From IMG/VR virus record IMGVR_UViG_3300024308_000302, positions 62,001 through 126,000 of that record: a stretch of DNA of 64,000 nt. One strand, given 5' to 3'. Shown in pieces: positions 4,183 to 62,786 of this stretch. Made by a program: the position numbers and the translations under genes. The notes under the pieces are model-generated. The model was not told where the DNA came from and did not search any database. It saw only the letters and a program-made list of their open reading frames with translations. Within the stretch, counting starts at the first letter, position 1, and every line of letters starts with the position of its first letter.

Positions 4183-5316
4183 TTAACCAGCGTCTTCGGT
4201 AGTCACACCAAGTGCTCCAAGGTCTACTTCGTCTAAAGACCAGTCAGACAAGTGATTACGAGAATAGAAAGTCAAGTAATCGTTTTTGAAGCCTCGAACC
4301 GCATTCATCACAAAAGAGAACTGTGGATGACCTTTCAGAGCAATTGCAACATCTTTGATAGGTTGGCCAACAAATTGCTTAGCAATTTCGTGGACTTCTT
4401 TATCAAGGTTTTCAATATGAGCCTTGATGCTATCATTGATATGATGAATGGTAGTCAAATCTGCTTCTGGTGCGTTCAATGCTAAGTAAGCAATATAATC
4501 ATCAAGTTTCTCTTCGACAACCAGTCGGGCAATGTCACGCTGACGAACAAAGGTAACAGCATGGTGCAATTCCATATACCATTTGGTTTTGATTTTAACC
4601 ATTTCACCATTCGCAAATTGAATTACATAACCTTCAATACCTTGAACAGTATTCAGCGACTTGATAAGGCTTGGCAAATCATAACCAACACCAAACAGCG
4701 GCTTGTTAACTGGAATATCAAACTTTGCAGCCAAAATTTCTTTTTCAACTGGCATGAGATATTCACCAGTGATATTGTCACGAACATGAAGCAAAGTCAT
4801 GTTTTCTTCGTCATATCGCAGAACAATACGATGGCTTGGCGAAGTGAACTCGAAAATAGGCGAAAGATTTGCCATCGAGCAATATTTAGTGAAATCGTAG
4901 TATTTCTGGTTTTTAGCAACAAACCCTTCTGATGCAACAGCAACATCAGATTTGAACGATTTTTTCGATTTCGCAAAGAACTGACCGTTCAGGAAACCAG
5001 CCGAAATCATCGAGCCGTCCATTTTGTCAAAACCCGCAACCATCGTATCCCAATTCAATACAGCGGGTTGAACTTCTGCACGCTCTGCAAGGTTGAAGAA
5101 TTTGTGCAGTGGGCGGGAAAGAATTTTGCCATCAGCATCAAAAGCGATACCACGGGCTTCTTTTTCCATCGGAGTGGTGAAGGACTCACCATTGCTGATA
5201 TTGTAGCAAATGACAGTAGCGTCATTCGATTGTTTGTTGATGCCAATGTATTCCTTATGTTGAACATGAGGAAGCATATCGTTGATGGTTTCGATACGTG
5301 GGAAGATACTGGGCAT
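4183..5316 (-). CDS. rnlA: T4 Rnl1-like RNA ligase
   Basis: Nucleotidyltransferase motifs KMDGS (I), EGYVI (IV), VKIK (V), plus KFFN and IFEF. Confidence 0.9.
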   Translation of the reverse strand: MPSIFPRIETINDMLPHVQHKEYIGINKQSNDATVICYNISNGESFTTPMEKEARGIAFDADGKILSRPLHKFFNLAERAEVQPAVLNWDTMVAGFDKMDGSMISAGFLNGQFFAKSKKSFKSDVAVASEGFVAKNQKYYDFTKYCSMANLSPIFEFTSPSHRIVLRYDEENMTLLHVRDNITGEYLMPVEKEILAAKFDIPVNKPLFGVGYDLPSLIKSLNTVQGIEGYVIQFANGEMVKIKTKWYMELHHAVTFVRQRDIARLVVEEKLDDYIAYLALNAPEADLTTIHHINDSIKAHIENLDKEVHEIAKQFVGQPIKDVAIALKGHPQFSFVMNAVRGFKNDYLTFYSRNHLSDWSLDEVDLGALGVTTEDAG

Positions 5317-42484: not shown

Positions 42485-43351
42485 ATGATTAAACTATTAC
42501 ATATTGCTATGATGGCAATAACTTTGACGCCAATTTCTTTTGCTGGATATACTATTAAAATACCTTTAGATAGTAGTCATATCAATATGGGAAATAATCA
42601 ACCAACTAACCCGACTAATCCAACTACACCATCAAAAAGTTATGATGACTTTTTAGAAGATCTATTTGCTAATAACACTGGATTCCAAGATAAATATAAT
42701 AACTTATGTAGTCAATATGAAGGCGGAGTAAGAACAGATTATGTGCCATCAGATGATGGAATAATTGATGTGAATGCTAACTGTGTTCAATTCCCCGGTT
42801 ATGATTTTTCTGGTAAAACATTCGCAGATGCAGCTATTGGTTGGGCCAGTTTCATTGGTGCAGATCTAAGTAATATACAGATGTCTGAGTTATATATGGA
42901 ATATACAGATTTTTCAGATGCTAACTTATCTAATGCTGTTGTAAATAATGGAGCCTTCAACTACGCAAGTTTTGATGGTACTAATATGTCATCAGCACAA
43001 TTTAATAATCCAAGTTTTATTGATTCATCTTTTGTTGATACCAATTTATCAAATGCTACTTTTGCAACAAACACAACTGTAAATTCATCTACTTTTGAAA
43101 ATGCAAATCTAAGTGGTGCAACATTTGAAGGTAACAACTCATTAAGAGGAACAACATTTACAAACTCTAATTTAAGTGGCGTAACATTTGGAGCAGGAAC
43201 AGGTTTTGATAACACTATTTTTGATGGAGTTGATTTAAGAGGTGCAGTATTCAGTGACTCACTTAATATCTATGGTGCTACATTTATAAATGTCATTTAT
43301 GATGAAACTACAGTTTGGCCAAGGTGGTATACACCACCAGCATCAATGTGA
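42485..43351 (+). CDS. exported pentapeptide-repeat protein (PL-motif family)
   Basis: Signal peptide, GYTIKIPLD, TNP linker, A(D/N)LS.A.F pentapeptide repeats. Confidence 0.88.
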   Translation: MIKLLHIAMMAITLTPISFAGYTIKIPLDSSHINMGNNQPTNPTNPTTPSKSYDDFLEDLFANNTGFQDKYNNLCSQYEGGVRTDYVPSDDGIIDVNANCVQFPGYDFSGKTFADAAIGWASFIGADLSNIQMSELYMEYTDFSDANLSNAVVNNGAFNYASFDGTNMSSAQFNNPSFIDSSFVDTNLSNATFATNTTVNSSTFENANLSGATFEGNNSLRGTTFTNSNLSGVTFGAGTGFDNTIFDGVDLRGAVFSDSLNIYGATFINVIYDETTVWPRWYTPPASM

Positions 43352-50171: not shown

Positions 50172-51301
50172 TTGACATCCACCCCATAGCTAAAGCAAGG
50201 AGATTCCTTCCGCAAGACGGCCATGCCCGACCGCAAGAATGTTAATGGCTGCGTTTACATCTCGTTGATGTATGCCACCGCATACATCACATTTCCATTC
50301 TCTTATTCGCAGCCCATCTAATCCTTTCGGCCCAGTTAAAGACTTACAAAGATGACAGGTGCGGGTTGTGTCTCTTTCGTCAACATTATTATCTAGTAGT
50401 ATGCCTGCGTTATCGCATTTATTTTTCAGCATACTTCTAATCAGGCCAAAGCCTGCATCTAATGTTGACTTTCCTCTTTTTGCTTTGAGCATTTTCTTAA
50501 TGCTCAAATCTCCAACATAAATCTCACTAAAATTTTTGACTAAATTTGTAGTGAATTTATGTAGAGAGTCTTTTCTAATATTAGCAATTTTAGCATGAAT
50601 ATTACGAACTCTTTTTTTATTATTAGCTCTTTGTTGAACTTTTAATTGTTTTTCATATTGTCTATAAACTTGATTATATTTAGTTTCACTTCCATCACTA
50701 GCCGTAGCAGAAGCTTTGAACCCAAGATCAACACCAACAGCCCCTTGACCAGACGACAATACTCTTGGTACTTCAACAACAACATTGAAGTACCAACGAC
50801 CACGAGCATCTTCATTAAAAGAAGCATTTTTAAATTCGTATTTTGACAGTTCATAACTGTCAAATACTGAATAATATTGCTTATTGAAATAAACTTGACC
50901 ATTCACCCAAGAAGCTGCTTTTGAGTTTATTGGAATCCAACCAAGACTTCTTCTTGATCCAAATGTTTTTCGCCATTTGAGTTTTTGTTTTTTAAACTGT
51001 TTTCTTCGAGTAGCATATTCTTTACAAATGGATTGAATGGTTTGACTATGCAAACCAAGTTCTTTAGCAGAACCATTGGTATATTTTTGCAGATCATAAT
51101 TTGAAAGAAACTTTTTATGTTCAACTATGTTTCTATGACTTAATTCATTAAGATAATTCCAAACAAAATTAACGTTCTTAGCCATCTGGCAAAGAACGTT
51201 TTTATGTTTATCTTTAACTCTAACTTTTAGAGTTTTTGTTGTATATTCGGAATTATTCATAGGTGAAATTATAGATTAAAATAAGAAAAAAGTCAATAGT
51301 T
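50172..51301 (-). mobile_element. IS200/IS605-family tnpB-only element
   Basis: Right end GGAATCTCC...GGGGTGGATGTCAA overlapping the tnpB stop; no tnpA; left end uncertain. Confidence 0.75.
50190..51260 (-). CDS. tnpB: RNA-guided endonuclease TnpB (rearranged RuvC type)
   Basis: VDLG, IYVGDL, VDERDTT, CHLC...CDVC Zn finger, RDVNAA. Confidence 0.93.
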   Translation of the reverse strand: MNNSEYTTKTLKVRVKDKHKNVLCQMAKNVNFVWNYLNELSHRNIVEHKKFLSNYDLQKYTNGSAKELGLHSQTIQSICKEYATRRKQFKKQKLKWRKTFGSRRSLGWIPINSKAASWVNGQVYFNKQYYSVFDSYELSKYEFKNASFNEDARGRWYFNVVVEVPRVLSSGQGAVGVDLGFKASATASDGSETKYNQVYRQYEKQLKVQQRANNKKRVRNIHAKIANIRKDSLHKFTTNLVKNFSEIYVGDLSIKKMLKAKRGKSTLDAGFGLIRSMLKNKCDNAGILLDNNVDERDTTRTCHLCKSLTGPKGLDGLRIREWKCDVCGGIHQRDVNAAINILAVGHGRLAEGISLL

Positions 51302-55524: not shown

Positions 55525-56478
55525 TCAAATGATTTTGAATTTTTTTACACCACCAAGAGAAAAATGAGCTATTTTGAAGTCCACCAACCTATACAGCAAG
55601 TCCAAAGTATAAGCAGAATCGTTGCCAGCATTATGAAGATAGCTTGAAAAATGGTTGACTTTAAGAGCTTTCAAAGCATCTTTAAGCGAAATATAATGAT
55701 TTTTGGCTGATTTTGCTGCAATGGATTCACATTCATTATAAATAACAGAAGATGTATCAATACATTTAATATGTTCAATTTGAGTCATATCAAAATTACA
55801 ATGACGCAAAATTTTGAATTCAATAGGTAATGCGTGACCAATAATAAAATCAACATCTTTTAGATGCTCAATGAGGATTGGGGCAAAATCATCATGAGTT
55901 ACGAGCACAGATGTGCCAAATTTGAAAGTGTCCATTCGTTTTTTAGTTGTTGTATAGTGAAAATGATTAACAACGCCATCAAAAGAAATAGTGACGCCCA
56001 TTTCAAAGATTTCTATTTTTTTTGATGAATCACGATATTCAAAATCAAGGGAAAGAATCTTTTTTCCTTCCAAGCTAATAGGAAGGGGAGATTCAAATTT
56101 TTCTGCAAATGCAGCTTTCTTTTCTTTGCGAACAGCAATACGTTTTTGTTCAATATCATTGAAAATAAGTTTGAATTCTTCATGGGAAGAAACATCAAAA
56201 AATTCAAGTTTTTCTTTTGAAAATTTTGCATACTTTTTGAATGCTGTAACTTTAAGTTCCAAAGAAAATAAACTATTTACATAATCAATAATTGGAATCA
56301 AAGAATTTTTTCCAATATGAATTTTATCTTCAAATATACAGAAAGAAGAAACAAGACCTTTATCAAAAAGATCTTGTTCATTGAAAACAGATTTAAATTG
56401 TGAAGCCAAATCACGATTTTCAATAAAAATAGATTGATTTAAAAAAGTAGATTTGAGAACTGCAAAGTTATAAATCAT
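55525..56478 (-). CDS. DEDDh 3'-5' exonuclease domain protein
   Basis: LDFEY, IIGH, IDTS, HNAGNDSAYT. Confidence 0.85.
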   Translation of the reverse strand: MIYNFAVLKSTFLNQSIFIENRDLASQFKSVFNEQDLFDKGLVSSFCIFEDKIHIGKNSLIPIIDYVNSLFSLELKVTAFKKYAKFSKEKLEFFDVSSHEEFKLIFNDIEQKRIAVRKEKKAAFAEKFESPLPISLEGKKILSLDFEYRDSSKKIEIFEMGVTISFDGVVNHFHYTTTKKRMDTFKFGTSVLVTHDDFAPILIEHLKDVDFIIGHALPIEFKILRHCNFDMTQIEHIKCIDTSSVIYNECESIAAKSAKNHYISLKDALKALKVNHFSSYLHNAGNDSAYTLDLLYRLVDFKIAHFSLGGVKKFKII

Positions 56479-56596
56479 GGTTAATCCTATTTTCATTAAT
56501 CAAAGGAATTTAAATAATTAATGCATTATAGCATAGGCTGGAGAAAAAGACCAACAAAAAAGGGCCGACTGGCCCTCTCTGAAACTTTTTTGATGT

Positions 56597-56993: not shown

Positions 56994-58061
56994 TCAGAAT
57001 GAATAAATATTCATTTTAGGAAGTTCCCAAAGATAAGGTGCAATTTTAATACGTTTCTTTTGAATATTATAAGGATGCTCAATAAATTCAACCATTTGAA
57101 GAACAGCCATCAAAGTATAAGCCGCATCATTACCAGCATTATGCAAAATCAAAGAGTTATGTTCAATTTTCAAAATATGAAGCATATTTGACAAAGAAAC
57201 AGATTTATTTTTCATGTTTTCAAAGTAAAAATTGAAACGAGATTTCATTAGACCTTGAGAATCAATTACTTTCAGGTTATCAATAGACAGAATATCAATA
57301 CCATGATGTTTGAGAACAATATGTTCACTTGAAACAGAATGGCCAATAAGGTAATCAACATTAAGCAAGCGATCTTTAACAATAATCAACAATTCTTGAA
57401 CTGTAACAAATTGACTGTTACCAAACAGAAACTTATTACTTACATCTTTAGGATAGTGGTTCTCACCAATAGTGTCATTAACAATATAATGCTCATAGCT
57501 AATGACACCATCCTTAAAAATAGCCATACCACATTCCAAAATCGTCCAGTCTTTATTGGAATCAAACTCAAAATCAATAGCCATGATACGATTTGACTTG
57601 AAATTGGCAGATAACTGACTATTGAGTTTTTCTGTAATTTGAATTTTTTCTATACTTTCGGCTTTCTTTTCTTCTTTAATAGCAGCCCGAACAGCATCTT
57701 TACTTTCTTTATGCTCACCATTCATATTGAAACGAATTTGCTCAACAGCATCTTCAAATGTCAAGTAATCAGAAACTGTAAATGCAATTTCAGCTTTAGT
57801 TGATTGCGGGTCTTGAATATCAAATCCAAATTGATTTTTAATAGCATTCATGATTTTTGCAAGTTGCATTTCATCAAAAAGAATTGTTGAGCTTTTAGAA
57901 ACATAAAGTTCATCAACAAAATCTTTTTTTGCAACTTTAGAAAGCTTATAATTTTCCATGAAATCTGCAAAGACAATTTTTCTTTCTTTTTTAGTCTTAA
58001 ATTGATCAATCAAGCTTTCTTTGAAAGCTACTTGAACAGAGTTCCAGAAATAAAGGTTCAT
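56994..58061 (-). CDS. DEDDh 3'-5' exonuclease domain protein (paralogue of 55525..56478)
   Basis: IDFEF, LIGH, IDSQ, HNAGNDAAYT. Confidence 0.85.
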   Translation of the reverse strand: MNLYFWNSVQVAFKESLIDQFKTKKERKIVFADFMENYKLSKVAKKDFVDELYVSKSSTILFDEMQLAKIMNAIKNQFGFDIQDPQSTKAEIAFTVSDYLTFEDAVEQIRFNMNGEHKESKDAVRAAIKEEKKAESIEKIQITEKLNSQLSANFKSNRIMAIDFEFDSNKDWTILECGMAIFKDGVISYEHYIVNDTIGENHYPKDVSNKFLFGNSQFVTVQELLIIVKDRLLNVDYLIGHSVSSEHIVLKHHGIDILSIDNLKVIDSQGLMKSRFNFYFENMKNKSVSLSNMLHILKIEHNSLILHNAGNDAAYTLMAVLQMVEFIEHPYNIQKKRIKIAPYLWELPKMNIYSF

Positions 58062-58238
58062 TTTTGTGATTCCTTGAAAAGATATGGCTATTATACCAAA
58101 AAAAGGGCTTCATGAAAAGAAAAAAATAGAGAAACATGTAAAATATTAAACAAATAATTATAAATGAAATAAATTTCCCTATATGATTATTGATTTTACT
58201 TATAAAATAAATATAATTTAAATAAAAAAGGAGGTTTT

Positions 58239-58835
58239 ATGAGTAAAAATAAAGAAATAACATCATATATTGAGTTATTAAAAAATATACAATTAAAAAA
58301 TGAAAAAATTATAGAATCAATATTTACTGAGCCATATGAATGGTATAAAGGAACACCGACAGAAATAAGAAAAGAAGATTCTATGACTAATGCTTTAATG
58401 TATAATGCATTAGCAAGAAAGATGATTGTTGAATATTATGATAAGTTCATGAATCCAATAAATTTGAAGTTTCTTGTTGAAAGGATTAAAAAAGAGAATG
58501 CTGTTTCTATATACAAAGATGATATAGATTATTTAAATGAAAAATATACAGATTTTATTAACAAAAACAGCTATAATGAACATAATACAGTAGAAAAAAA
58601 TAGTATTAACAAGAATGAATTAAATATAATGATTAATAAAACAATCAATAGTTATGAAGAGTTCAAGGTATTATCAGATTACGTTAAAAATTATAAAGTA
58701 GAAATTACAACATCTTTTTCATTTTTTAGTGTCAACAAAATTGAAATGGTAAGCAAAAACTTAATAGCAAATTATCCATCATTAATTGGTATTTTTGGCA
58801 TTATGATGAATGTAAAAAGAAAAATGAAAGAATAA
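58239..58835 (+). CDS. very AT-rich hypothetical protein
   Basis: 198 aa, AAGGAGG RBS, opposite strand. Confidence 0.8.
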   Translation: MSKNKEITSYIELLKNIQLKNEKIIESIFTEPYEWYKGTPTEIRKEDSMTNALMYNALARKMIVEYYDKFMNPINLKFLVERIKKENAVSIYKDDIDYLNEKYTDFINKNSYNEHNTVEKNSINKNELNIMINKTINSYEEFKVLSDYVKNYKVEITTSFSFFSVNKIEMVSKNLIANYPSLIGIFGIMMNVKRKMKE

Positions 58836-58867
58836 AAGCCACGTATATGGCTTTTAGTTTGCTGTTA

Positions 58868-60403
58868 TTATTTAATACAACCAACTTCACAACTGTATGA
58901 AGCACCTTGCGTCTCAGAAGATATATACCAGTGCCCATTTAAGTTTTTATAGACCTTACAACCAGTAGGACCAGCACCAGAACCAATATATAGACCAGTT
59001 AAAAAACAACCAGAATACTGTCCAAGAGATCGTATAACAGGAGCAGTTGTTCCAGAATCTGAGCCACCACCAGCATAAGTACCCATAGAAATTAAATTAG
59101 ATCCAGAATTATTACTCCATATACCACTTATACAAGATAAAACACCACCTGTTGAATTTCTCGCAAGAGAACCATTAGGTGAACATGAACGACCTTCAAC
59201 CTCAACTTTAGTAAGATTGATATTGTTATCAAATTGAGCAGTACCTCTTGTATGTAAAGTACCATCCATAGATGTATTACCATTAACAACTAAATCATTT
59301 TTAACTGTCAAATAATTAGTATTTACAGCATTTGAAAATATAGTATCAGTATAAAGTTTATTGATCAAACCTTTCTGAGCAGATATGTTGTCAACTACTT
59401 GGTAGGCTACAGTAGATCCATTGTCGTCCATAGAGAATATTCCACATGGAGCAGTCTGAGCAGAATCAACCAATCCATCATCAGTGTTCTTATAAATAGG
59501 GCATAATTTATCAAGCATTATTCTTGAACTGATAGAAGAGTTTGTAACAACATCAACAGCAACAGGTGCTCCTGTCGTATTTTGAATGCCAATACCACAG
59601 TCAACATTAGAAGAGTTCCAAGAACCTGTTACTGTATCTTGTATCCATTTTAAACAAAGAAGTTTATCATTATCTTTAGTTGATTTAAACGTAACTGATG
59701 AACCAATCATAGAATTTGTGCCATCAACTCTTAAATGTTCATTACCACCCTCTCTATCATAAGTAGCAACTAACACACAATTGTTTTTCAAAGCCAAACA
59801 TTCTTTATTAGTTATTTTAGAATTTGTATCGGATGTTGAGGCAAAATAGAATTGATGACCACCAGTAATATTAAGAGAGTCATTTGCTTTTGCTGTCATA
59901 ATTGCTTTGTTATAATATCTGAAATTTTGAGAAAATACTTGTTGATTCTTTGCTTGGAATGTAACTTTGAAGTTCTTTATAAAACCTTCTGCATCTGGTG
60001 TTATCTTTGCCTTAATGTCAAAATTATAAGGTGATTTTGACCAGAAGTTACAAGGAATTAATTGTGTTGATTTTTCTGAGTCCAAAACAGGAACCCAGTT
60101 TTTTGCTCCACCACATGAAGATTGTTGTGCGATAAACTCTGTGCTGAGCATAGAAAGAATAGCATTAGAGCCAACCCATTCAGTGCCATTTTTAAAGTTA
60201 TTGATATCTAATCCATCTACATGAATTCTTTTATCAAATGCCGTAACAATTGAAACAATGTCTTTACCAAATATTAGTGCTTGTTCTTCACGCTGTCTTT
60301 CTAAGTACCAATAAAGAATACCCACAACGATTATCATGATTATACTAAGTGAAATGAGAGTTTCCAGAAGTGTTAAACCATCAGTTTTTTTTATAGATTG
60401 CAT
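58868..60403 (-). CDS. type IV prepilin-like PilV-type tip adhesin
   Basis: Prepilin cleavage G|LTLLE plus TM helix; GRSCSPNGSLARNSTGGVLSCISGIW as in shufflon PilV constant region; Cys-rich C-terminal module. Confidence 0.8.
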   Translation of the reverse strand: MQSIKKTDGLTLLETLISLSIIMIIVVGILYWYLERQREEQALIFGKDIVSIVTAFDKRIHVDGLDINNFKNGTEWVGSNAILSMLSTEFIAQQSSCGGAKNWVPVLDSEKSTQLIPCNFWSKSPYNFDIKAKITPDAEGFIKNFKVTFQAKNQQVFSQNFRYYNKAIMTAKANDSLNITGGHQFYFASTSDTNSKITNKECLALKNNCVLVATYDREGGNEHLRVDGTNSMIGSSVTFKSTKDNDKLLCLKWIQDTVTGSWNSSNVDCGIGIQNTTGAPVAVDVVTNSSISSRIMLDKLCPIYKNTDDGLVDSAQTAPCGIFSMDDNGSTVAYQVVDNISAQKGLINKLYTDTIFSNAVNTNYLTVKNDLVVNGNTSMDGTLHTRGTAQFDNNINLTKVEVEGRSCSPNGSLARNSTGGVLSCISGIWSNNSGSNLISMGTYAGGGSDSGTTAPVIRSLGQYSGCFLTGLYIGSGAGPTGCKVYKNLNGHWYISSETQGASYSCEVGCIK

Positions 60404-60645
60404 ATAGGAAGTGTTGTGACTTTATAATAAAATAACATAGAGTCCAATAATAAAGTATTACAATATGGTTAATATTTGATGAAATTTTTATTAAATTGTT
60501 ATTTATAAAGGATTTTTTGATAATTAATATTATATTTAAATAAATAGTGAATAAAAAATAAATGTTAAAATATATCAAATTATTAGATTAATTAAGAGTG
60601 TTGAATAATATTAAAAAAGCACTTATTTCTAAGTGCTTTATTTAA

Positions 60646-61410
60646 TTATAACAATATTTTTCTAACTCTACAAATTTCTGTATATTCGTAATTTGGATTA
60701 GGGCCAGAAACTGATGGTATGCGATTAGCATTGTGTAGATAAACATAAGAACCTTCTCTATCTGGATCATAATCTGATGGCACATGATACCATGTGTTGG
60801 ATATAACAGATATACCAAAAGTAGATGATTGCATAACATACTTACCGTTTACAGTATCATATGCTGAATAATCAGAATTTATATTAAAAATACATTCTGG
60901 AGTCCAATCAGGGCCTGATTGATCTTCTTGTTCTGGTGGATTATATGGTGGTTCTTCCTCATCATCTTCATATCCACCACCTGATGGCATTGGTACTGTA
61001 GGATAAATTTTACTGTCATCAACACAAATTTCATAGTTATCCATTTGTGGATTAGATTCTTTTAAAGCTCCTTCAGTAACCCCACTTGGCGGGCCACTAT
61101 GACCATTAGATGGACTATAAAACCCTATTATTCTTCCTTGATATACATAACCTTTATCTCCAGCTTTCAAAGCACCCATAGGTTGCTTAAAATAAGTAAC
61201 CATGTAGCCTGTTTCACCATTGTACTGACAATTACCACTCTGGTTGTCATTTGATTCAGAACCACTACCAGAGCCAATAACAATACTACCAGTTGGCAAA
61301 CTGCCACCATTGGTAAGTTCTAATGGAATCAAGACTGAAAACTCTGCAAATGAAGGTGAAACACTTGCAATTGCTACTAACAAGGCAGTTAATTTTATTC
61401 TTTTTTTCAT
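60646..61410 (-). CDS. exported protein, PLE-motif family, two Cys-bounded repeats
   Basis: Signal peptide then EFSVLIPLELTNGGSLPTGSI; C...YEIC and C...TEIC modules. Confidence 0.85.
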   Translation of the reverse strand: MKKRIKLTALLVAIASVSPSFAEFSVLIPLELTNGGSLPTGSIVIGSGSGSESNDNQSGNCQYNGETGYMVTYFKQPMGALKAGDKGYVYQGRIIGFYSPSNGHSGPPSGVTEGALKESNPQMDNYEICVDDSKIYPTVPMPSGGGYEDDEEEPPYNPPEQEDQSGPDWTPECIFNINSDYSAYDTVNGKYVMQSSTFGISVISNTWYHVPSDYDPDREGSYVYLHNANRIPSVSGPNPNYEYTEICRVRKILL

Positions 61411-61562: not shown

Positions 61563-62690
61563 CTAACCAAGTTTTTCAATTGTACAAATAACAGGCCGAT
61601 CTGTATACACATTTGAATTATAATTGGTTATTTTATATCTACCCGGAATTACAGGCACAACAACACCACCAAGGTCATCTACAACTTCTTCAAATGACAA
61701 GTTACGTTCGACTGCATATTTTTCAACAAGCTCACTGTTAACAGCTTGAATACACCATGCATCAGTGATCACTTTTCCTTTTGATTTAAATCCTTCATGA
61801 GAAATAGGGAAAATATAGTCCTTTTTAGATCGCCAAGCTTTAGAGTTAACAGCCATAATACTGCCAGTTTTTTTATTGAATGCAATAATAGGAGAAGAGT
61901 TTTGAACTGGAACCATCAATAATCCATGTTTAAGCATAAATTCCTGATGATATAAAGACCCAATAAGAGAATTTGTGTTATTGTAATAACCTGTGCGTTC
62001 TATAATGTAGTTGATAGAATCTGAATGGCCTTGAGGAATCAAATTATTCTGTAGATCATTGGCAAAAACAAGATGATCTGATGTTACATCCATAAAGCTT
62101 TGATGTTCTTCAATGCCATTAGGGTAGTTGCATTTTCTTTGAATTCCTTCACCCCAAATAGAAATTTGTTGAACATCATCAAGTTTATCCCAATGTGGGC
62201 CATCTTTAACCAAAACAGACCCCATAGAAATAACACCATCTTTCATATAGTATGAAGTAGTAGATCCACAAACATGACAATAAGTAGATGGAGCATGAGT
62301 TGGCATAATTGCTTGTTTATAAAAGTAAATTGGAGCATCCATAATTTCATCACGGATTAACTCATAACTTTTTCCCTTTTTAATAGCAATATGAATATCA
62401 CATACCATTGATTTTAAACATGTCATAACATTTTGTTTAATACTTTCTAGAACAAGCTTGGCCATTCTGGATTTATCATTAGCAAGATTCCCCAGAGTGT
62501 AGCCTGAAAAAAGGTTGCTATTGTGCCCACCAAGATCAAGTAGAGTAGAATTGAAAGCATCATTCAATTCGTTTTGAAAAACAGAATGAGTAATAGTATG
62601 TTCAGCCATAGACCAAGAAGTATCGCCAGTGGATGCCGATATGCATTTTTGGTGAATAGCTTTGATTAATTGTTCATAATTAATAATCAT
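61563..62690 (-). CDS. hypothetical protein with CxxC
   Basis: 375 aa; YCHVCG. Confidence 0.85.
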   Translation of the reverse strand: MIINYEQLIKAIHQKCISASTGDTSWSMAEHTITHSVFQNELNDAFNSTLLDLGGHNSNLFSGYTLGNLANDKSRMAKLVLESIKQNVMTCLKSMVCDIHIAIKKGKSYELIRDEIMDAPIYFYKQAIMPTHAPSTYCHVCGSTTSYYMKDGVISMGSVLVKDGPHWDKLDDVQQISIWGEGIQRKCNYPNGIEEHQSFMDVTSDHLVFANDLQNNLIPQGHSDSINYIIERTGYYNNTNSLIGSLYHQEFMLKHGLLMVPVQNSSPIIAFNKKTGSIMAVNSKAWRSKKDYIFPISHEGFKSKGKVITDAWCIQAVNSELVEKYAVERNLSFEEVVDDLGGVVVPVIPGRYKITNYNSNVYTDRPVICTIEKLG

Positions 62691-62786
62691 AGTTAACCTT
62701 TTGGTGAAAATTAATACTTGATTATACAACAAAACAAAATATTTGTCACCAGAAATAAAAAAGACCTCCGAAGAGGTCTTTTAAAT

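What the first reader, a model, noticed from the sequence alone, without database searches (positions are those of the whole stretch)
58868..60403. Phage-encoded type IV prepilin / PilV-like adhesin with no pilus machinery
It has a canonical prepilin peptidase site (G|LTLLE), a long body, and the C...NG..AR...G..L.C.SG.W segment that precedes the variable tip in plasmid shufflon PilV. No ATPase, secretin or peptidase gene is in the window, so it would need the host type IV pilus or T2SS machinery. Type IV pili are common phage receptors, so it might cap, jam or re-target host pili (superinfection exclusion, receptor masking or altered adhesion).
Basis: partly seen in the sequence, partly recalled or inferred. 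Interest (0 to 1): 0.72.

Follow-up and report, generated by a model that had tools for sequence, protein, structure and literature searches.

The report
Shufflon-less PilV-like pilus tip adhesin
The gene is a real type IV pilus tip protein with a swappable binding end and a conserved secreted partner, but it probably belongs to a 1.5-megabase plasmid-like element that software mislabels as a prophage, so it likely serves that element's own pilus and does not hijack the host's.

Summary
Window 58868-60403 (-) encodes a 511-aa protein with a class III (prepilin) signal (G9|L, E at +5). Its predicted N-domain has a type IVb pilin fold, and its overall architecture is closest to the tip minor pilins TcpB and CofB. 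A 42-residue Cys-bracketed junction module is homologous to R64 PilV. No pilus ATPase, secretin, prepilin peptidase or Rci recombinase is present in the window or in the whole 290-kb record, and no shufflon repeats flank the gene.

The "phage" reading is weak. The record has no capsid or terminase match and no ORF above 633 aa. It is a slice of a 1,539,155-bp contig that matches the recently described pMEGA megaplasmids in size, low GC, tRNA density, TnpB copies and scattered "shufflon/pilin" genes. geNomad is reported to call false proviruses in those plasmids, and they carry their own R64-like type IVb pilus and Dot/Icm system.

Three family-level results are new here:
- The family has a constant body and hypervariable tips, and some tips are phage tail-fibre domains.
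- Orphan copies sit on small Pseudomonas islands.
- The gene is usually adjacent to a secreted protein family (11 paralogs in the record) whose conserved, disordered N-terminal "handle" recalls the TcpF/CofJ export signal.

Most likely role: an alternative tip adhesin or exoprotein dock for the element's own pilus.

The parts
58868..60403 (-). PilV-like type IVb tip (minor) pilin gene, 511 aa, its own transcription unit
   Evidence: ORF. Pfam Shufflon_N above cutoff. 255 homolog clusters. Foldseek top six hits are TcpB and CofB at E 3e-6 to 1e-5. VIA-align Z 8.6 for TcpB and 8.2 for CofB.
60377..60403 (-). Leader peptide (residues 1-9, ending in the G9 cleavage-site glycine)
   Evidence: Read directly from the sequence. 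G9 and E14 are at least 90% conserved in the family.
59756..60376 (-). Type IVb pilin domain (residues 10-216: alpha1 helix plus alpha/beta domain with disulfide C97-C118)
   Evidence: AlphaFold model with pLDDT 80-92 over residues 20-216. Matches the CofA pilus (Z 7.4, rmsd 3.5 A over 159 residues), TcpA (Z 7.3) and S. Typhi PilS (Z 6.8).
59228..59755 (-). Constant beta-rich stalk (residues 217-392), with invariant Cys 202/209, 250/269 and 301/320 and a beta-helix-like neck that varies in length between family members
   Evidence: Family alignment A1. Low to moderate model confidence. Homologs with longer necks give bactofilin-like or Shufflon_N repeat hits.
59102..59227 (-). Junction module (residues 393-434) shared with R64 PilV, ending the constant region
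   Evidence: hhalign probability 97% to R64 PilV residues 327-368. BLASTP E 4e-10. Pfam Shufflon_N positions 241-324.
58871..59101 (-). Lineage-specific tip (residues 435-511), small beta domain with four Cys
   Evidence: Shared only with P0001-P0003 and P0044; other family members carry unrelated tips. The tip-only search found no other homolog. Weak resemblance to pyocin or phage fibre end domains, Z 3-5.
58833..58856 (-). Terminator-like hairpin after the pilin gene (bidirectional, shared with the convergent ORF 58239-58835)
   Evidence: sequence.
60646..61410 (-). Secreted "handle-family" partner gene, 254 aa: Sec signal peptide, conserved 22-aa N-terminal handle, Gly/Ser/Asn linker, two beta domains
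   Evidence: A handle-family gene is adjacent to the pilin gene in 10 of about 16 independent contexts. Alignment A2. Model. The highest contig depth in two wastewater RNA-seq libraries falls on this gene.
61276..61344 (-). Conserved N-terminal handle of the mature partner (residues 23-45; consensus Y-x-x-K-I-P-L-E-x-x-x-G-G-x-L-P-x-G-S-I-x-I), candidate pilus export or docking signal
   Evidence: It is the only segment conserved across the family. Predicted coil with pLDDT 45-63. Analogous to the TcpF/CofJ export signal that binds TcpB/CofB (PMC10120004). Binding itself is not shown.
60616..60639 (-). Terminator-like hairpin after the partner gene
42485..43351 (+). Second handle-family paralog inside the window (288 aa); one of 11 in the 290-kb record

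Best explanation
The gene encodes a type IVb minor (tip) pilin built like TcpB, CofB and R64 PilV. It has a prepilin leader and hydrophobic alpha1 helix that insert it into a pilus, a disulfide-rich constant body, a conserved junction module, and a small exchangeable receptor-binding tip.

It is not part of a shufflon. The tip is fixed in this copy, and across the family diversity comes from different full-length genes carrying different tips, some borrowed from phage tail fibres.

The gene forms a two-gene module with a Sec-exported protein. That protein's conserved, intrinsically disordered N-terminal handle is inferred to dock on the pilin, in the way TcpF and CofJ dock on TcpB and CofB.

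The carrier is most likely a pMEGA-like, roughly 1.5-Mb low-GC megaplasmid or giant extrachromosomal element, not a phage; software labels a 290-kb slice of it as a provirus. On that reading the protein works with the element's own R64-like type IVb pilus, encoded outside the readable 290 kb. It would act as one of several alternative tip adhesins that choose which cell surfaces the pilus binds (mating-pair or aggregate formation), and possibly as the dock that exports the handle-family proteins.

Shown: the sequence features, the predicted fold class, the family architecture, the lack of a shufflon, the gene linkage, the contig size, and the lack of machinery in 290 kb.

Inferred: processing and pilus incorporation, tip location, handle docking, the megaplasmid identity, and the presence of a cognate pilus elsewhere on the replicon.
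For: - Prepilin signal conserved family-wide.
- N-domain is a T4b pilin fold, and the whole protein is closest to TcpB and CofB.
- The junction module is homologous to R64 PilV.
- Constant body with unrelated tips across 17 aligned members and 255 clusters of 500-1460 aa.
- The tips of P0006 and P0026 match phage tail-fibre or tail-collar PHROGs at E 1e-30 to 1e-18.
- No Rci, no inverted repeats and no alternate cassettes.
- A handle-family gene is adjacent in 10 of about 16 contexts, including five or more Pseudomonas islands.
- The handle is disordered and sits at the mature N-terminus, as in TcpF/CofJ.
- The source contig is 1,539,155 bp. The record carries 34 tRNAs, TnpB copies and tandem multicopy families, with GC 27-37%.
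- The pMEGA preprint reports 1.31-1.58 Mb, 104-208 tRNAs, no phage structural genes, geNomad false proviruses, multicopy shufflon/pilin proteins (SF2096), and an R64-like T4bP cluster next to Dot/Icm.
- More distant family members lie next to a pilus-type secretin cluster (L026) or a PilB/GspE-type ATPase (L028).
Against: - I could not read the other 1.25 Mb of the contig, so a cognate pilus cluster on this replicon is not demonstrated.
- No sequence comparison with pMEGA genomes was possible, and there was no hit in E. coli RefSeq genomes or PLSDB.
- GC here (about 32%) is above the pMEGA range (25.7-29.6%), and the sample is a subsurface metagenome, not gut.
- Only one pilin copy lies in the 290 kb, against 7-16 per pMEGA.
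- T4-like RNA ligase, an HNH homing endonuclease and tRNA arrays are also phage-like traits.
- Orphan copies on small Pseudomonas islands show the module can travel without any pilus genes. No R64-type PilN secretin was found in the P. entomophila draft that carries one.
- The complex prediction of pilin plus partner gave no answer.
- The structure model has only moderate confidence beyond residue 216.
Confidence: 0.55

Rival explanations
1. A phage (or other small mobile element) carries an orphan tip pilin that is processed by the host prepilin peptidase and incorporated into host type IV pili. There it caps or remodels the tip so that pilus-dependent competitors can no longer adsorb (superinfection exclusion), or it retargets adhesion.
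For: - IMG/VR provirus label.
- T4 RnlA-like RNA ligase, with the best phage hit being the Ralstonia jumbo phage RsoM2USA at 40% identity; an HNH homing endonuclease; 34 tRNAs.
- No machinery in 290 kb.
- Orphan homologs sit on small Pseudomonas islands beside restriction-modification systems and recombinases, and one lies next to lambdoid tail genes.
Against: - No capsid or terminase match, no large ORFs and no recoding in the record.
- The record is a slice of a 1.54-Mb contig, and geNomad is known to mis-call proviruses in similar megaplasmids.
- The fold is T4b TcpB/CofB-like, not FimU-like.
- Long bodies with tail-fibre-type binding tips and a linked secreted partner suggest active binding or export, not simple masking.
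- No PADLOC defence match.
Confidence: 0.15
2. Export-dock model. The main job of the pilin is to serve as the periplasmic or tip docking site through which a type IV pilus pushes out the handle-family proteins. There are 11 paralogs in the record, each a different cargo behind the same 22-residue export signal, so this would be a multi-substrate version of TcpB-TcpF or CofB-CofJ.
For: - Conserved adjacency of pilin and handle genes.
- The handle is the only conserved segment. It lies at the mature N-terminus, is predicted disordered, and is followed by a flexible linker and variable domains; one homolog has an LRR domain.
- TcpF and CofJ precedent (PMC10120004, PMC6048534, PMC9565799).
- The handle does not vary with the pilin tip, so it would bind the constant body.
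- The partner gene shows the highest depth in two RNA-seq libraries.
Against: - The complex prediction gave score 0.00, which the tool says is no evidence either way.
- There is no sequence homology between the handle and the TcpF or CofJ signals.
- Ten of the eleven paralogs are not next to a pilin gene.
- Several family contexts lack a handle gene (L016, L018, L026, L028).
- The RNA-seq depth comes from assembled contigs and may include DNA.
Confidence: 0.25
3. Not a pilus subunit at all. It would be a bitopic membrane or surface fibre protein whose N-terminal hydrophobic helix merely resembles a prepilin signal, for example a tail-fibre-like or contact-dependent adhesin anchored in the inner membrane.
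For: - Pfam N_methyl is below its cutoff in this copy.
- The tips are related to phage tail fibres, and there is a weak PHROG long-tail-fibre hit.
- No machinery nearby.
Against: - G-1 and E+5 are conserved across the family, and N_methyl passes its cutoff in homologs.
- The N-domain superposes on T4b pilins at rmsd about 3.5 A.
- Ten invariant Cys indicate an exported, disulfide-bonded protein.
- NCBI annotates homologs as PilV or FimT-family pilins.
Confidence: 0.05

Closest known systems
TcpB (Vibrio cholerae TCP) and CofB (ETEC CFA/III) type IVb minor pilins, with their exoproteins TcpF and CofJ
   Same: They are the best structural matches for the whole protein (Foldseek E 3e-6 to 1e-5; Z 8.6 and 8.2). 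The layout is shared: a T4b pilin domain followed by beta-rich C-terminal domains. The gene is linked to a secreted protein whose disordered mature N-terminus is the conserved element, as in TcpF and CofJ.
   Different: There is no detectable sequence homology. The gene is not inside a tcp- or cof-type operon. The tip is hypervariable between family members. There are 11 candidate cargo paralogs where TcpB and CofB each have one. Trimer formation and docking are untested.
PilV of IncI1/IncI2 plasmids (R64, TP114), the shufflon-diversified thin-pilus tip adhesin
   Same: Both have a prepilin leader of similar length, a constant region followed by a variable C-terminal tip, and a homologous junction module just before the variable part. 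They probably share the logic of choosing cell-surface receptors. pMEGA-type elements, like IncI plasmids, pair an R64-like T4b pilus with a Dot/Icm-type T4SS.
   Different: The roughly 330-residue body is not detectably homologous to R64 PilV. There is no Rci, no sfx repeats and no invertible cassettes; diversity is spread over separate genes. No pilI-pilU genes lie in cis within 290 kb.
SF2096 "possible bacterial shufflons/pilin proteins" of pMEGA megaplasmids (bioRxiv 10.1101/2025.09.30.679422)
   Same: These are scattered type IVb prepilin genes on a 1.3-1.6-Mb, low-GC, tRNA-rich element that geNomad partly calls provirus. Their best structural hits, CofA and S. Typhi PilS, are the same as for our N-domain.
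   Different: Membership could not be tested because pMEGA sequences are not in the searchable collections. Our element has higher GC and comes from a subsurface sample. The preprint does not describe the tip-swapping architecture, the junction module or the handle-family partner.
Prophage-encoded FimU (P-FimU) of Pseudomonas F10-like phages (PMC12952977)
   Same: It is a mobile-element-borne minor pilin without pilus machinery that uses the host pilus. It is the closest precedent for the orphan copies on Pseudomonas islands.
   Different: P-FimU is a small T4a minor pilin that replaces host FimU and protects by masking. The protein here is a 500-1400-aa T4b-type tip pilin with binding domains and a secreted partner, and no anti-phage role has been tested.

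Membership tests
Type IV pilins (class III signal peptide proteins) | Short basic leader ending in Gly, Glu at +5, and a hydrophobic alpha1N helix of about 20 residues | tested here: met
   MQSIKKTDG|LTLLE followed by a hydrophobic stretch. G9 and E14 are at least 90% conserved. N_methyl is below its cutoff here (18.6 vs 21.2 bits) but above it in homologs P0016 and P0041.
Type IV pilins (class III signal peptide proteins) | Cleavage and N-methylation by a prepilin peptidase, and incorporation into a filament | not testable with these tools
   Needs expression in a host with PilD or PilU, a mass-shift assay, and mass spectrometry of sheared pili.
Type IVb pilin fold / TcpB-CofB class minor pilins | T4b alpha/beta pilin domain followed by extra beta-rich C-terminal domains | tested here: met
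   For model residues 10-216: CofA pilus Z 7.4 at rmsd 3.5 A, TcpA Z 7.3, PilS Z 6.8. For the whole length: TcpB Z 8.6, CofB Z 8.2, Foldseek probability 1.0. The model is predicted, and pLDDT is low beyond residue 216.
Type IVb pilin fold / TcpB-CofB class minor pilins | Homotrimer at the pilus tip that binds the N-terminal export signal of a secreted partner | tested here: inconclusive
   A linked partner with a conserved, disordered N-terminus exists. The 1:1 complex prediction gave no answer. A trimer exceeded the tool's size limit.
Pfam PF04917 Shufflon_N / IncI PilV | Match to the 324-position constant region of shufflon PilV | tested here: inconclusive
   The score is above the gathering cutoff (30.0 vs 27.5 bits) but covers only profile positions 241-324. 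hhalign and BLASTP against R64 PilV align only the junction module.
Shufflon (Rci multiple-inversion system) | Rci tyrosine recombinase, repeated sfx sites, and alternative C-terminal segments downstream of pilV | tested here: not met
   No Phage_integrase-family gene in 290 kb. No significant direct or inverted repeats around the 3' end. The gene ends at a terminator that faces an unrelated convergent ORF.
Self-contained type IVb pilus operon (R64 pil, tcp, cof, bfp) | Assembly ATPase, platform protein, secretin, prepilin peptidase and major pilin on the same element | tested here: inconclusive
   Absent from the 290-kb record. The remaining 1.25 Mb of contig Ga0247725_1000001 could not be read.
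Tailed phage or prophage | Major capsid protein, large terminase, portal and tail genes | tested here: not met
   No Gp23, HK97 capsid or Terminase_6C match. The largest ORF is 633 aa, and the big ORFs have no PHROG structural hits. No recoding hides long ORFs. Only a few Pfam models were tried, so divergent capsids could be missed.
pMEGA-type megaplasmids | 1.3-1.6 Mb replicon, very low GC, more than 100 tRNAs, mostly unknown proteins, no phage structural genes, geNomad provirus calls, multicopy pilin, TnpB and RNase-H-like families | tested here: inconclusive
   Contig size 1.54 Mb. 34 tRNAs per 290 kb, which scales to about 180. TnpB and tandem families present. Provirus label. GC of about 32% is slightly above the published 25.7-29.6%. 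No sequence comparison with pMEGA was possible; circularity, Rep, relaxase and T4SS are unseen.

The most novel reading that the evidence does not exclude
The pilin and the handle family together form a portable, multi-substrate type IV pilus export and adhesion kit. A mobile tip pilin with exchangeable phage-tail-fibre-like tips plugs into whatever T4 pilus is available. A shared 22-residue disordered N-terminal signal lets a whole repertoire of different secreted proteins (11 in this 290 kb) ride out on it. That would generalise the one-pilus, one-exoprotein TcpB-TcpF and CofB-CofJ mechanism into a modular secretion system carried by giant plasmids and small Pseudomonas islands alike.
Probability: 0.22. 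Interest if true: 0.75.

Novelty: new variant of a known kind. Interest (0 to 1): 0.5.

Why it matters
Tip adhesins decide what a type IV pilus binds, including recipients for conjugation, host tissues and phages. This family appears to diversify the tip without a shufflon, by spreading alternative full-length genes across a giant element and exchanging tips with phage tail fibres. That links plasmid host range to phage receptor-binding evolution.

The conserved handle family gives a directly testable candidate for a generalised pilus-dependent export signal; only two single-substrate examples (TcpF and CofJ) are understood so far.

The case also illustrates a practical point: geNomad and IMG/VR provirus records can be slices of megabase plasmid-like elements, so inferences that start from "phage-encoded" need hallmark-gene checks.

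Tried and rejected
- DNA and protein searches of INPHARED phages and PLSDB plasmids with the gene found nothing. E. coli RefSeq genomes also gave no match.
- PADLOC found no defence-family hit for the pilin, the partner or their neighbours.
- I expected a Pfam tail-collar domain in the Pseudomonas tips and did not find one. PHROGs did show tail-fibre homology for the P0006 and P0026 tips, but not for this window's tip.
- A tip-only homolog search found nothing.
- The 1:1 complex prediction of pilin and partner returned "no answer", so I use it neither way.
- The partner's globular domains have no PDB fold match.
- Stop-codon recoding as an explanation for the lack of long ORFs is rejected, despite two CTA-anticodon tRNAs.
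- An attempt to infer the host from the element's PepA-like gene against 400 gammaproteobacterial genomes gave a uniform 41-49% identity and no clue. One genome in that set, G040, is flagged unpublished; no claim here rests on it.
- I disregard CheckV's 96% completeness, because the record lacks any virion module.
Full report
**1. Observation**

The ORF is present exactly as described: window 58868-60403, minus strand, ATG start, 511 aa.

Its N-terminus is a textbook class III signal. A 9-residue basic leader ends in Gly, followed by LTLLE (Glu at +5) and a hydrophobic helix. In a 17-member family alignment, G9 and E14 are at least 90% conserved. Pfam N_methyl is just under its cutoff here (18.6 vs 21.2 bits) but passes in homologs.

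It gives a Shufflon_N hit above the gathering score (30.0 vs 27.5 bits), restricted to profile positions 241-324 of 324. It aligns to R64 PilV residues 327-368 with hhalign probability 97% and 43% identity. The roughly 330-residue body is not detectably homologous to R64 PilV.

The gene has its own terminator-like hairpin (58833-58856) and a 240-nt AT-rich upstream spacer. The two upstream genes each end in a hairpin as well.

**2. No shufflon and no machinery within reach**

The whole 290,157-bp record that contains the window has:
- no T2SSE-family ATPase, A24 prepilin peptidase, secretin or tyrosine recombinase;
- no second prepilin-type ORF;
- no meaningful direct or inverted repeats around the 3' end of the gene.

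The ORF downstream is convergent and unrelated. The tip is therefore fixed in this copy.

**3. Structure**

An AlphaFold model built on alignment A1 has mean pLDDT 66. Residues 20-216 are confident, at 80-92.
- Foldseek against the PDB returns TcpB and CofB as its six significant hits (E 3e-6 to 1e-5, probability 1.0). These include the entries with the TcpF and CofJ N-terminal peptides bound. Type IVb major pilins follow.
- VIA-align gives TcpB Z 8.6 and CofB Z 8.2 over the whole length.
- For residues 10-216 it gives the CofA pilus at Z 7.4 (rmsd 3.5 A over 159 residues), TcpA at Z 7.3 and S. Typhi PilS at Z 6.8.
- The tip (residues 434-511) only weakly resembles pyocin, phage or Bdellovibrio fibre end domains, at Z 3-5.
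- No PDB relative is detectable by sequence.

**4. The family**

The word-indexed search found 46 proteins, with identities from 86% down to 35%. The exhaustive search found 255 clusters at E<=1e-3, 102 of them at E<=1e-30, with lengths from about 500 to 1460 aa. The match always covers query residues about 5-400.

The alignment shows a constant body with ten invariant cysteines, a beta-helix-like neck of variable length, and the junction module. After that come completely unrelated C-terminal tips.
- The tip of the P. aeruginosa homolog P0006 matches more than 20 PHROG tail-fibre or tail-collar families (E down to 4.5e-30).
- The tip of P0026 matches others (2.6e-18).
- Long members carry Calx-beta and virion-protein-like segments.
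- The tip type in this window has no match.

The logic is that of PilV, a constant shaft with an exchangeable receptor-binding end. Here it is implemented as separate genes that trade tips with phage receptor-binding proteins.

**5. Contexts**

Close homologs (60-67% identity) sit on small islands in Pseudomonas:
- P. aeruginosa: serine recombinase, BglII-type restriction-modification system, Replicase/PriCT_1 (L015);
- P. putida (L018);
- P. entomophila, the only hit among 185,579 species genomes (L020);
- a contig with three tyrosine recombinases and a FokI restriction-modification system (L019);
- an IMG/VR contig where the island abuts lambdoid tail genes (L021).

None of these has pilus genes nearby. 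No R64-type PilN secretin model hit was found in the P. entomophila draft.

More distant members lie in very large contigs. There are two copies 10 kb apart on a 1.92-Mb contig, L016. There are also two copies on a 1.86-Mb contig. One of these is 4 kb from a secretin-containing four-gene cluster (L026, divergent MshL-like secretin). A tandem pair sits near a PilB/GspE-type ATPase, L028.

**6. A conserved partner**

The gene immediately upstream (60646-61410, minus strand, 254 aa) encodes a Sec signal peptide followed at once by a conserved 22-residue segment, consensus Y-x-x-K-I-P-L-E-x-x-x-G-G-x-L-P-x-G-S-I-x-I. A Gly/Ser/Asn/Pro-rich linker and variable Cys-containing domains follow.

An HMM of this "handle" finds a family member directly beside the pilin gene in the following contexts:
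- the window, L014 and L029 (copies of the same locus);
- L015 and L019 (two copies each);
- L020, L021, L030, L031 and L032;
- L033 (two copies);
- L034.

It finds none beside the pilin gene in L016, L018, L026, L027, L028 or L037. The 290-kb record holds 11 paralogs, including four in tandem.

The AlphaFold model of the partner (pLDDT 79.5) predicts the handle and linker (residues 23-58) as low-confidence coil. Two confident beta domains follow, and they have no PDB fold match. One Pseudomonas paralog has an LRR domain.

This arrangement mirrors TcpF and CofJ. Their disordered mature N-terminus is the export signal that binds the tip minor pilin TcpB or CofB (PMC10120004, PMC9565799, PMC6048534). 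The handle does not change with the pilin tip, so any docking would be on the constant body. A 1:1 complex prediction returned "no answer", so docking remains an inference.

In two wastewater RNA-seq libraries, contigs at least 99% identical cover the partner gene at depth 75 and 37. The pilin gene has depth about 5, and neighbouring genes have 0-8. This suggests transcription, with the caveats the tool states.

**7. What carries it**

IMG/VR labels the record "provirus", with a CheckV completeness of 96%. Several results argue against a phage:
- Nearly all 469 ORFs are small and on one strand, and the largest is 633 aa.
- Capsid (Gp23, HK97) and terminase models find nothing.
- The large ORFs are a Na/H exchanger, an M17 peptidase, a TnpB-like protein and unknowns.
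- Recoding does not create long ORFs.

Phage-like traits do exist: a T4 RnlA-like RNA ligase (best phage relative the Ralstonia jumbo phage RsoM2USA, 40% identity), an HNH homing endonuclease, and 34 tRNAs.

The decisive fact is that the gene lies, at 100% identity, on metagenome contig Ga0247725_1000001, which is 1,539,155 bp long. The "provirus" is roughly positions 221-511 kb of it.

A 2025 preprint (10.1101/2025.09.30.679422) describes the pMEGA megaplasmids of Enterobacteriaceae:
- size 1.31-1.58 Mb, GC 25.7-29.6%, 104-208 tRNAs, about 80% unknown proteins and no phage structural genes;
[quoted passage not shown] - in pMEGA4, an R64-like T4b pilus cluster (CofA-like pilins, PilC, BfpD-like ATPase, PilO2Bp, secretin, PilT) next to a Dot/Icm T4SS, plus scattered T4b prepilins.

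Our element fits this description in size, tRNA density, gene content and the software artefact. It differs in GC (about 32% over the 290 kb) and in source (subsurface). Near-identical sequence also occurs in soil, freshwater, silage, food, plant and wastewater runs, and in runs labelled with three coded organisms.

I could not compare sequences with pMEGA or read the remaining 1.25 Mb. The assignment is therefore probable (about 0.65), not shown.

**8. Interpretation**

Most likely (0.55), this is one of several alternative tip adhesins for the element's own conjugative type IVb pilus. It would be a gene-family substitute for the IncI shufflon, and it may double as the dock for handle-family exoproteins.

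It has the P-FimU precedent, but nothing here tests it.

The export-dock model (0.25) is compatible with the main explanation and is the most novel testable element.

Noticed in passing
L007:13840-13914 and L007:14849-14923 (record coordinates about 179.8 and 180.8 kb): Two tRNAs with a CTA anticodon (amber-suppressor type, which ARAGORN calls Pyl) lie among 34 tRNAs, all on the minus strand, with many repeated Leu(TAA), Arg(TCT) and Met genes. TAG is the rarest stop (32 of 469), but reading TAG as sense does not lengthen ORFs.
   Followed up: partly
L008:9-2678 (record 186009-188678): Four handle-family genes sit in tandem on the minus strand, and further paralogs are scattered through the record (11 in all). 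Most are far from any pilin gene.
   Followed up: partly
window 4183-5316 (-): A T4 RnlA-like RNA ligase (phrog_562, E 1e-66). Its best phage relative is the 344-kb Ralstonia jumbo phage RsoM2USA at 40% identity. The pMEGA preprint suggests that tRNA ligases counter tRNA-targeting defence.
   Followed up: partly
window 55525-56496 (-) and 56994-58061 (-): Two paralogous genes just downstream of the pilin gene. Their homologs in L014 carry a DEDDh_C (RNase-H-like fold) exonuclease domain. This is reminiscent of the tandem RNase H families reported for clade 2 pMEGAs.
   Followed up: no
window 50190-51260 (-) and L012:692-2449 (-): L012:692-2449 (-) carries a Cas12f1-like TNB domain. The window ORF looks TnpB-like from its sequence but was not scanned. 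TnpB-like genes are another multicopy feature shared with pMEGAs.
   Followed up: no
L009:3584-6924 and L010:4593-7972 (record 209584-212924 and 230593-233972): A duplicated gene pair (480+633 aa and 498+628 aa) with similar N-termini and no Pfam or PHROG match. These are the largest ORFs of the record.
   Followed up: no
window 61563-62732 (-); L005:7930-9039 and L005:9117-10205: The 389-aa ORF upstream of the partner gene has at least two paralogs elsewhere in the record with similar N-terminal sequence. It is syntenic in L014. Its function is unknown.
   Followed up: no
window 58136-58312 and 60462: In DNA run X6 (coded organism B), contigs match 57000-58150 and 58207-60462 without a single difference. 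However, 429 other bases replace 58163-58211, and the contig stops 180 nt short of the partner gene. The pilin gene is therefore identical in a differently arranged neighbourhood.
   Followed up: no
L015:9959-11650: The database protein P0017 (P. aeruginosa "PilV") is called from an internal start. The frame opens 42 nt upstream with a full prepilin signal, MTIKSRHAG|LTLFE.
   Followed up: yes
L028:6890-13119: Two family members sit in tandem (649 aa and 1406 aa). The longer one carries Calx-beta and a virion-structural-protein-like segment. They lie near a PilB/GspE-type ATPase, an RpoD-like sigma factor and HU.
   Followed up: partly
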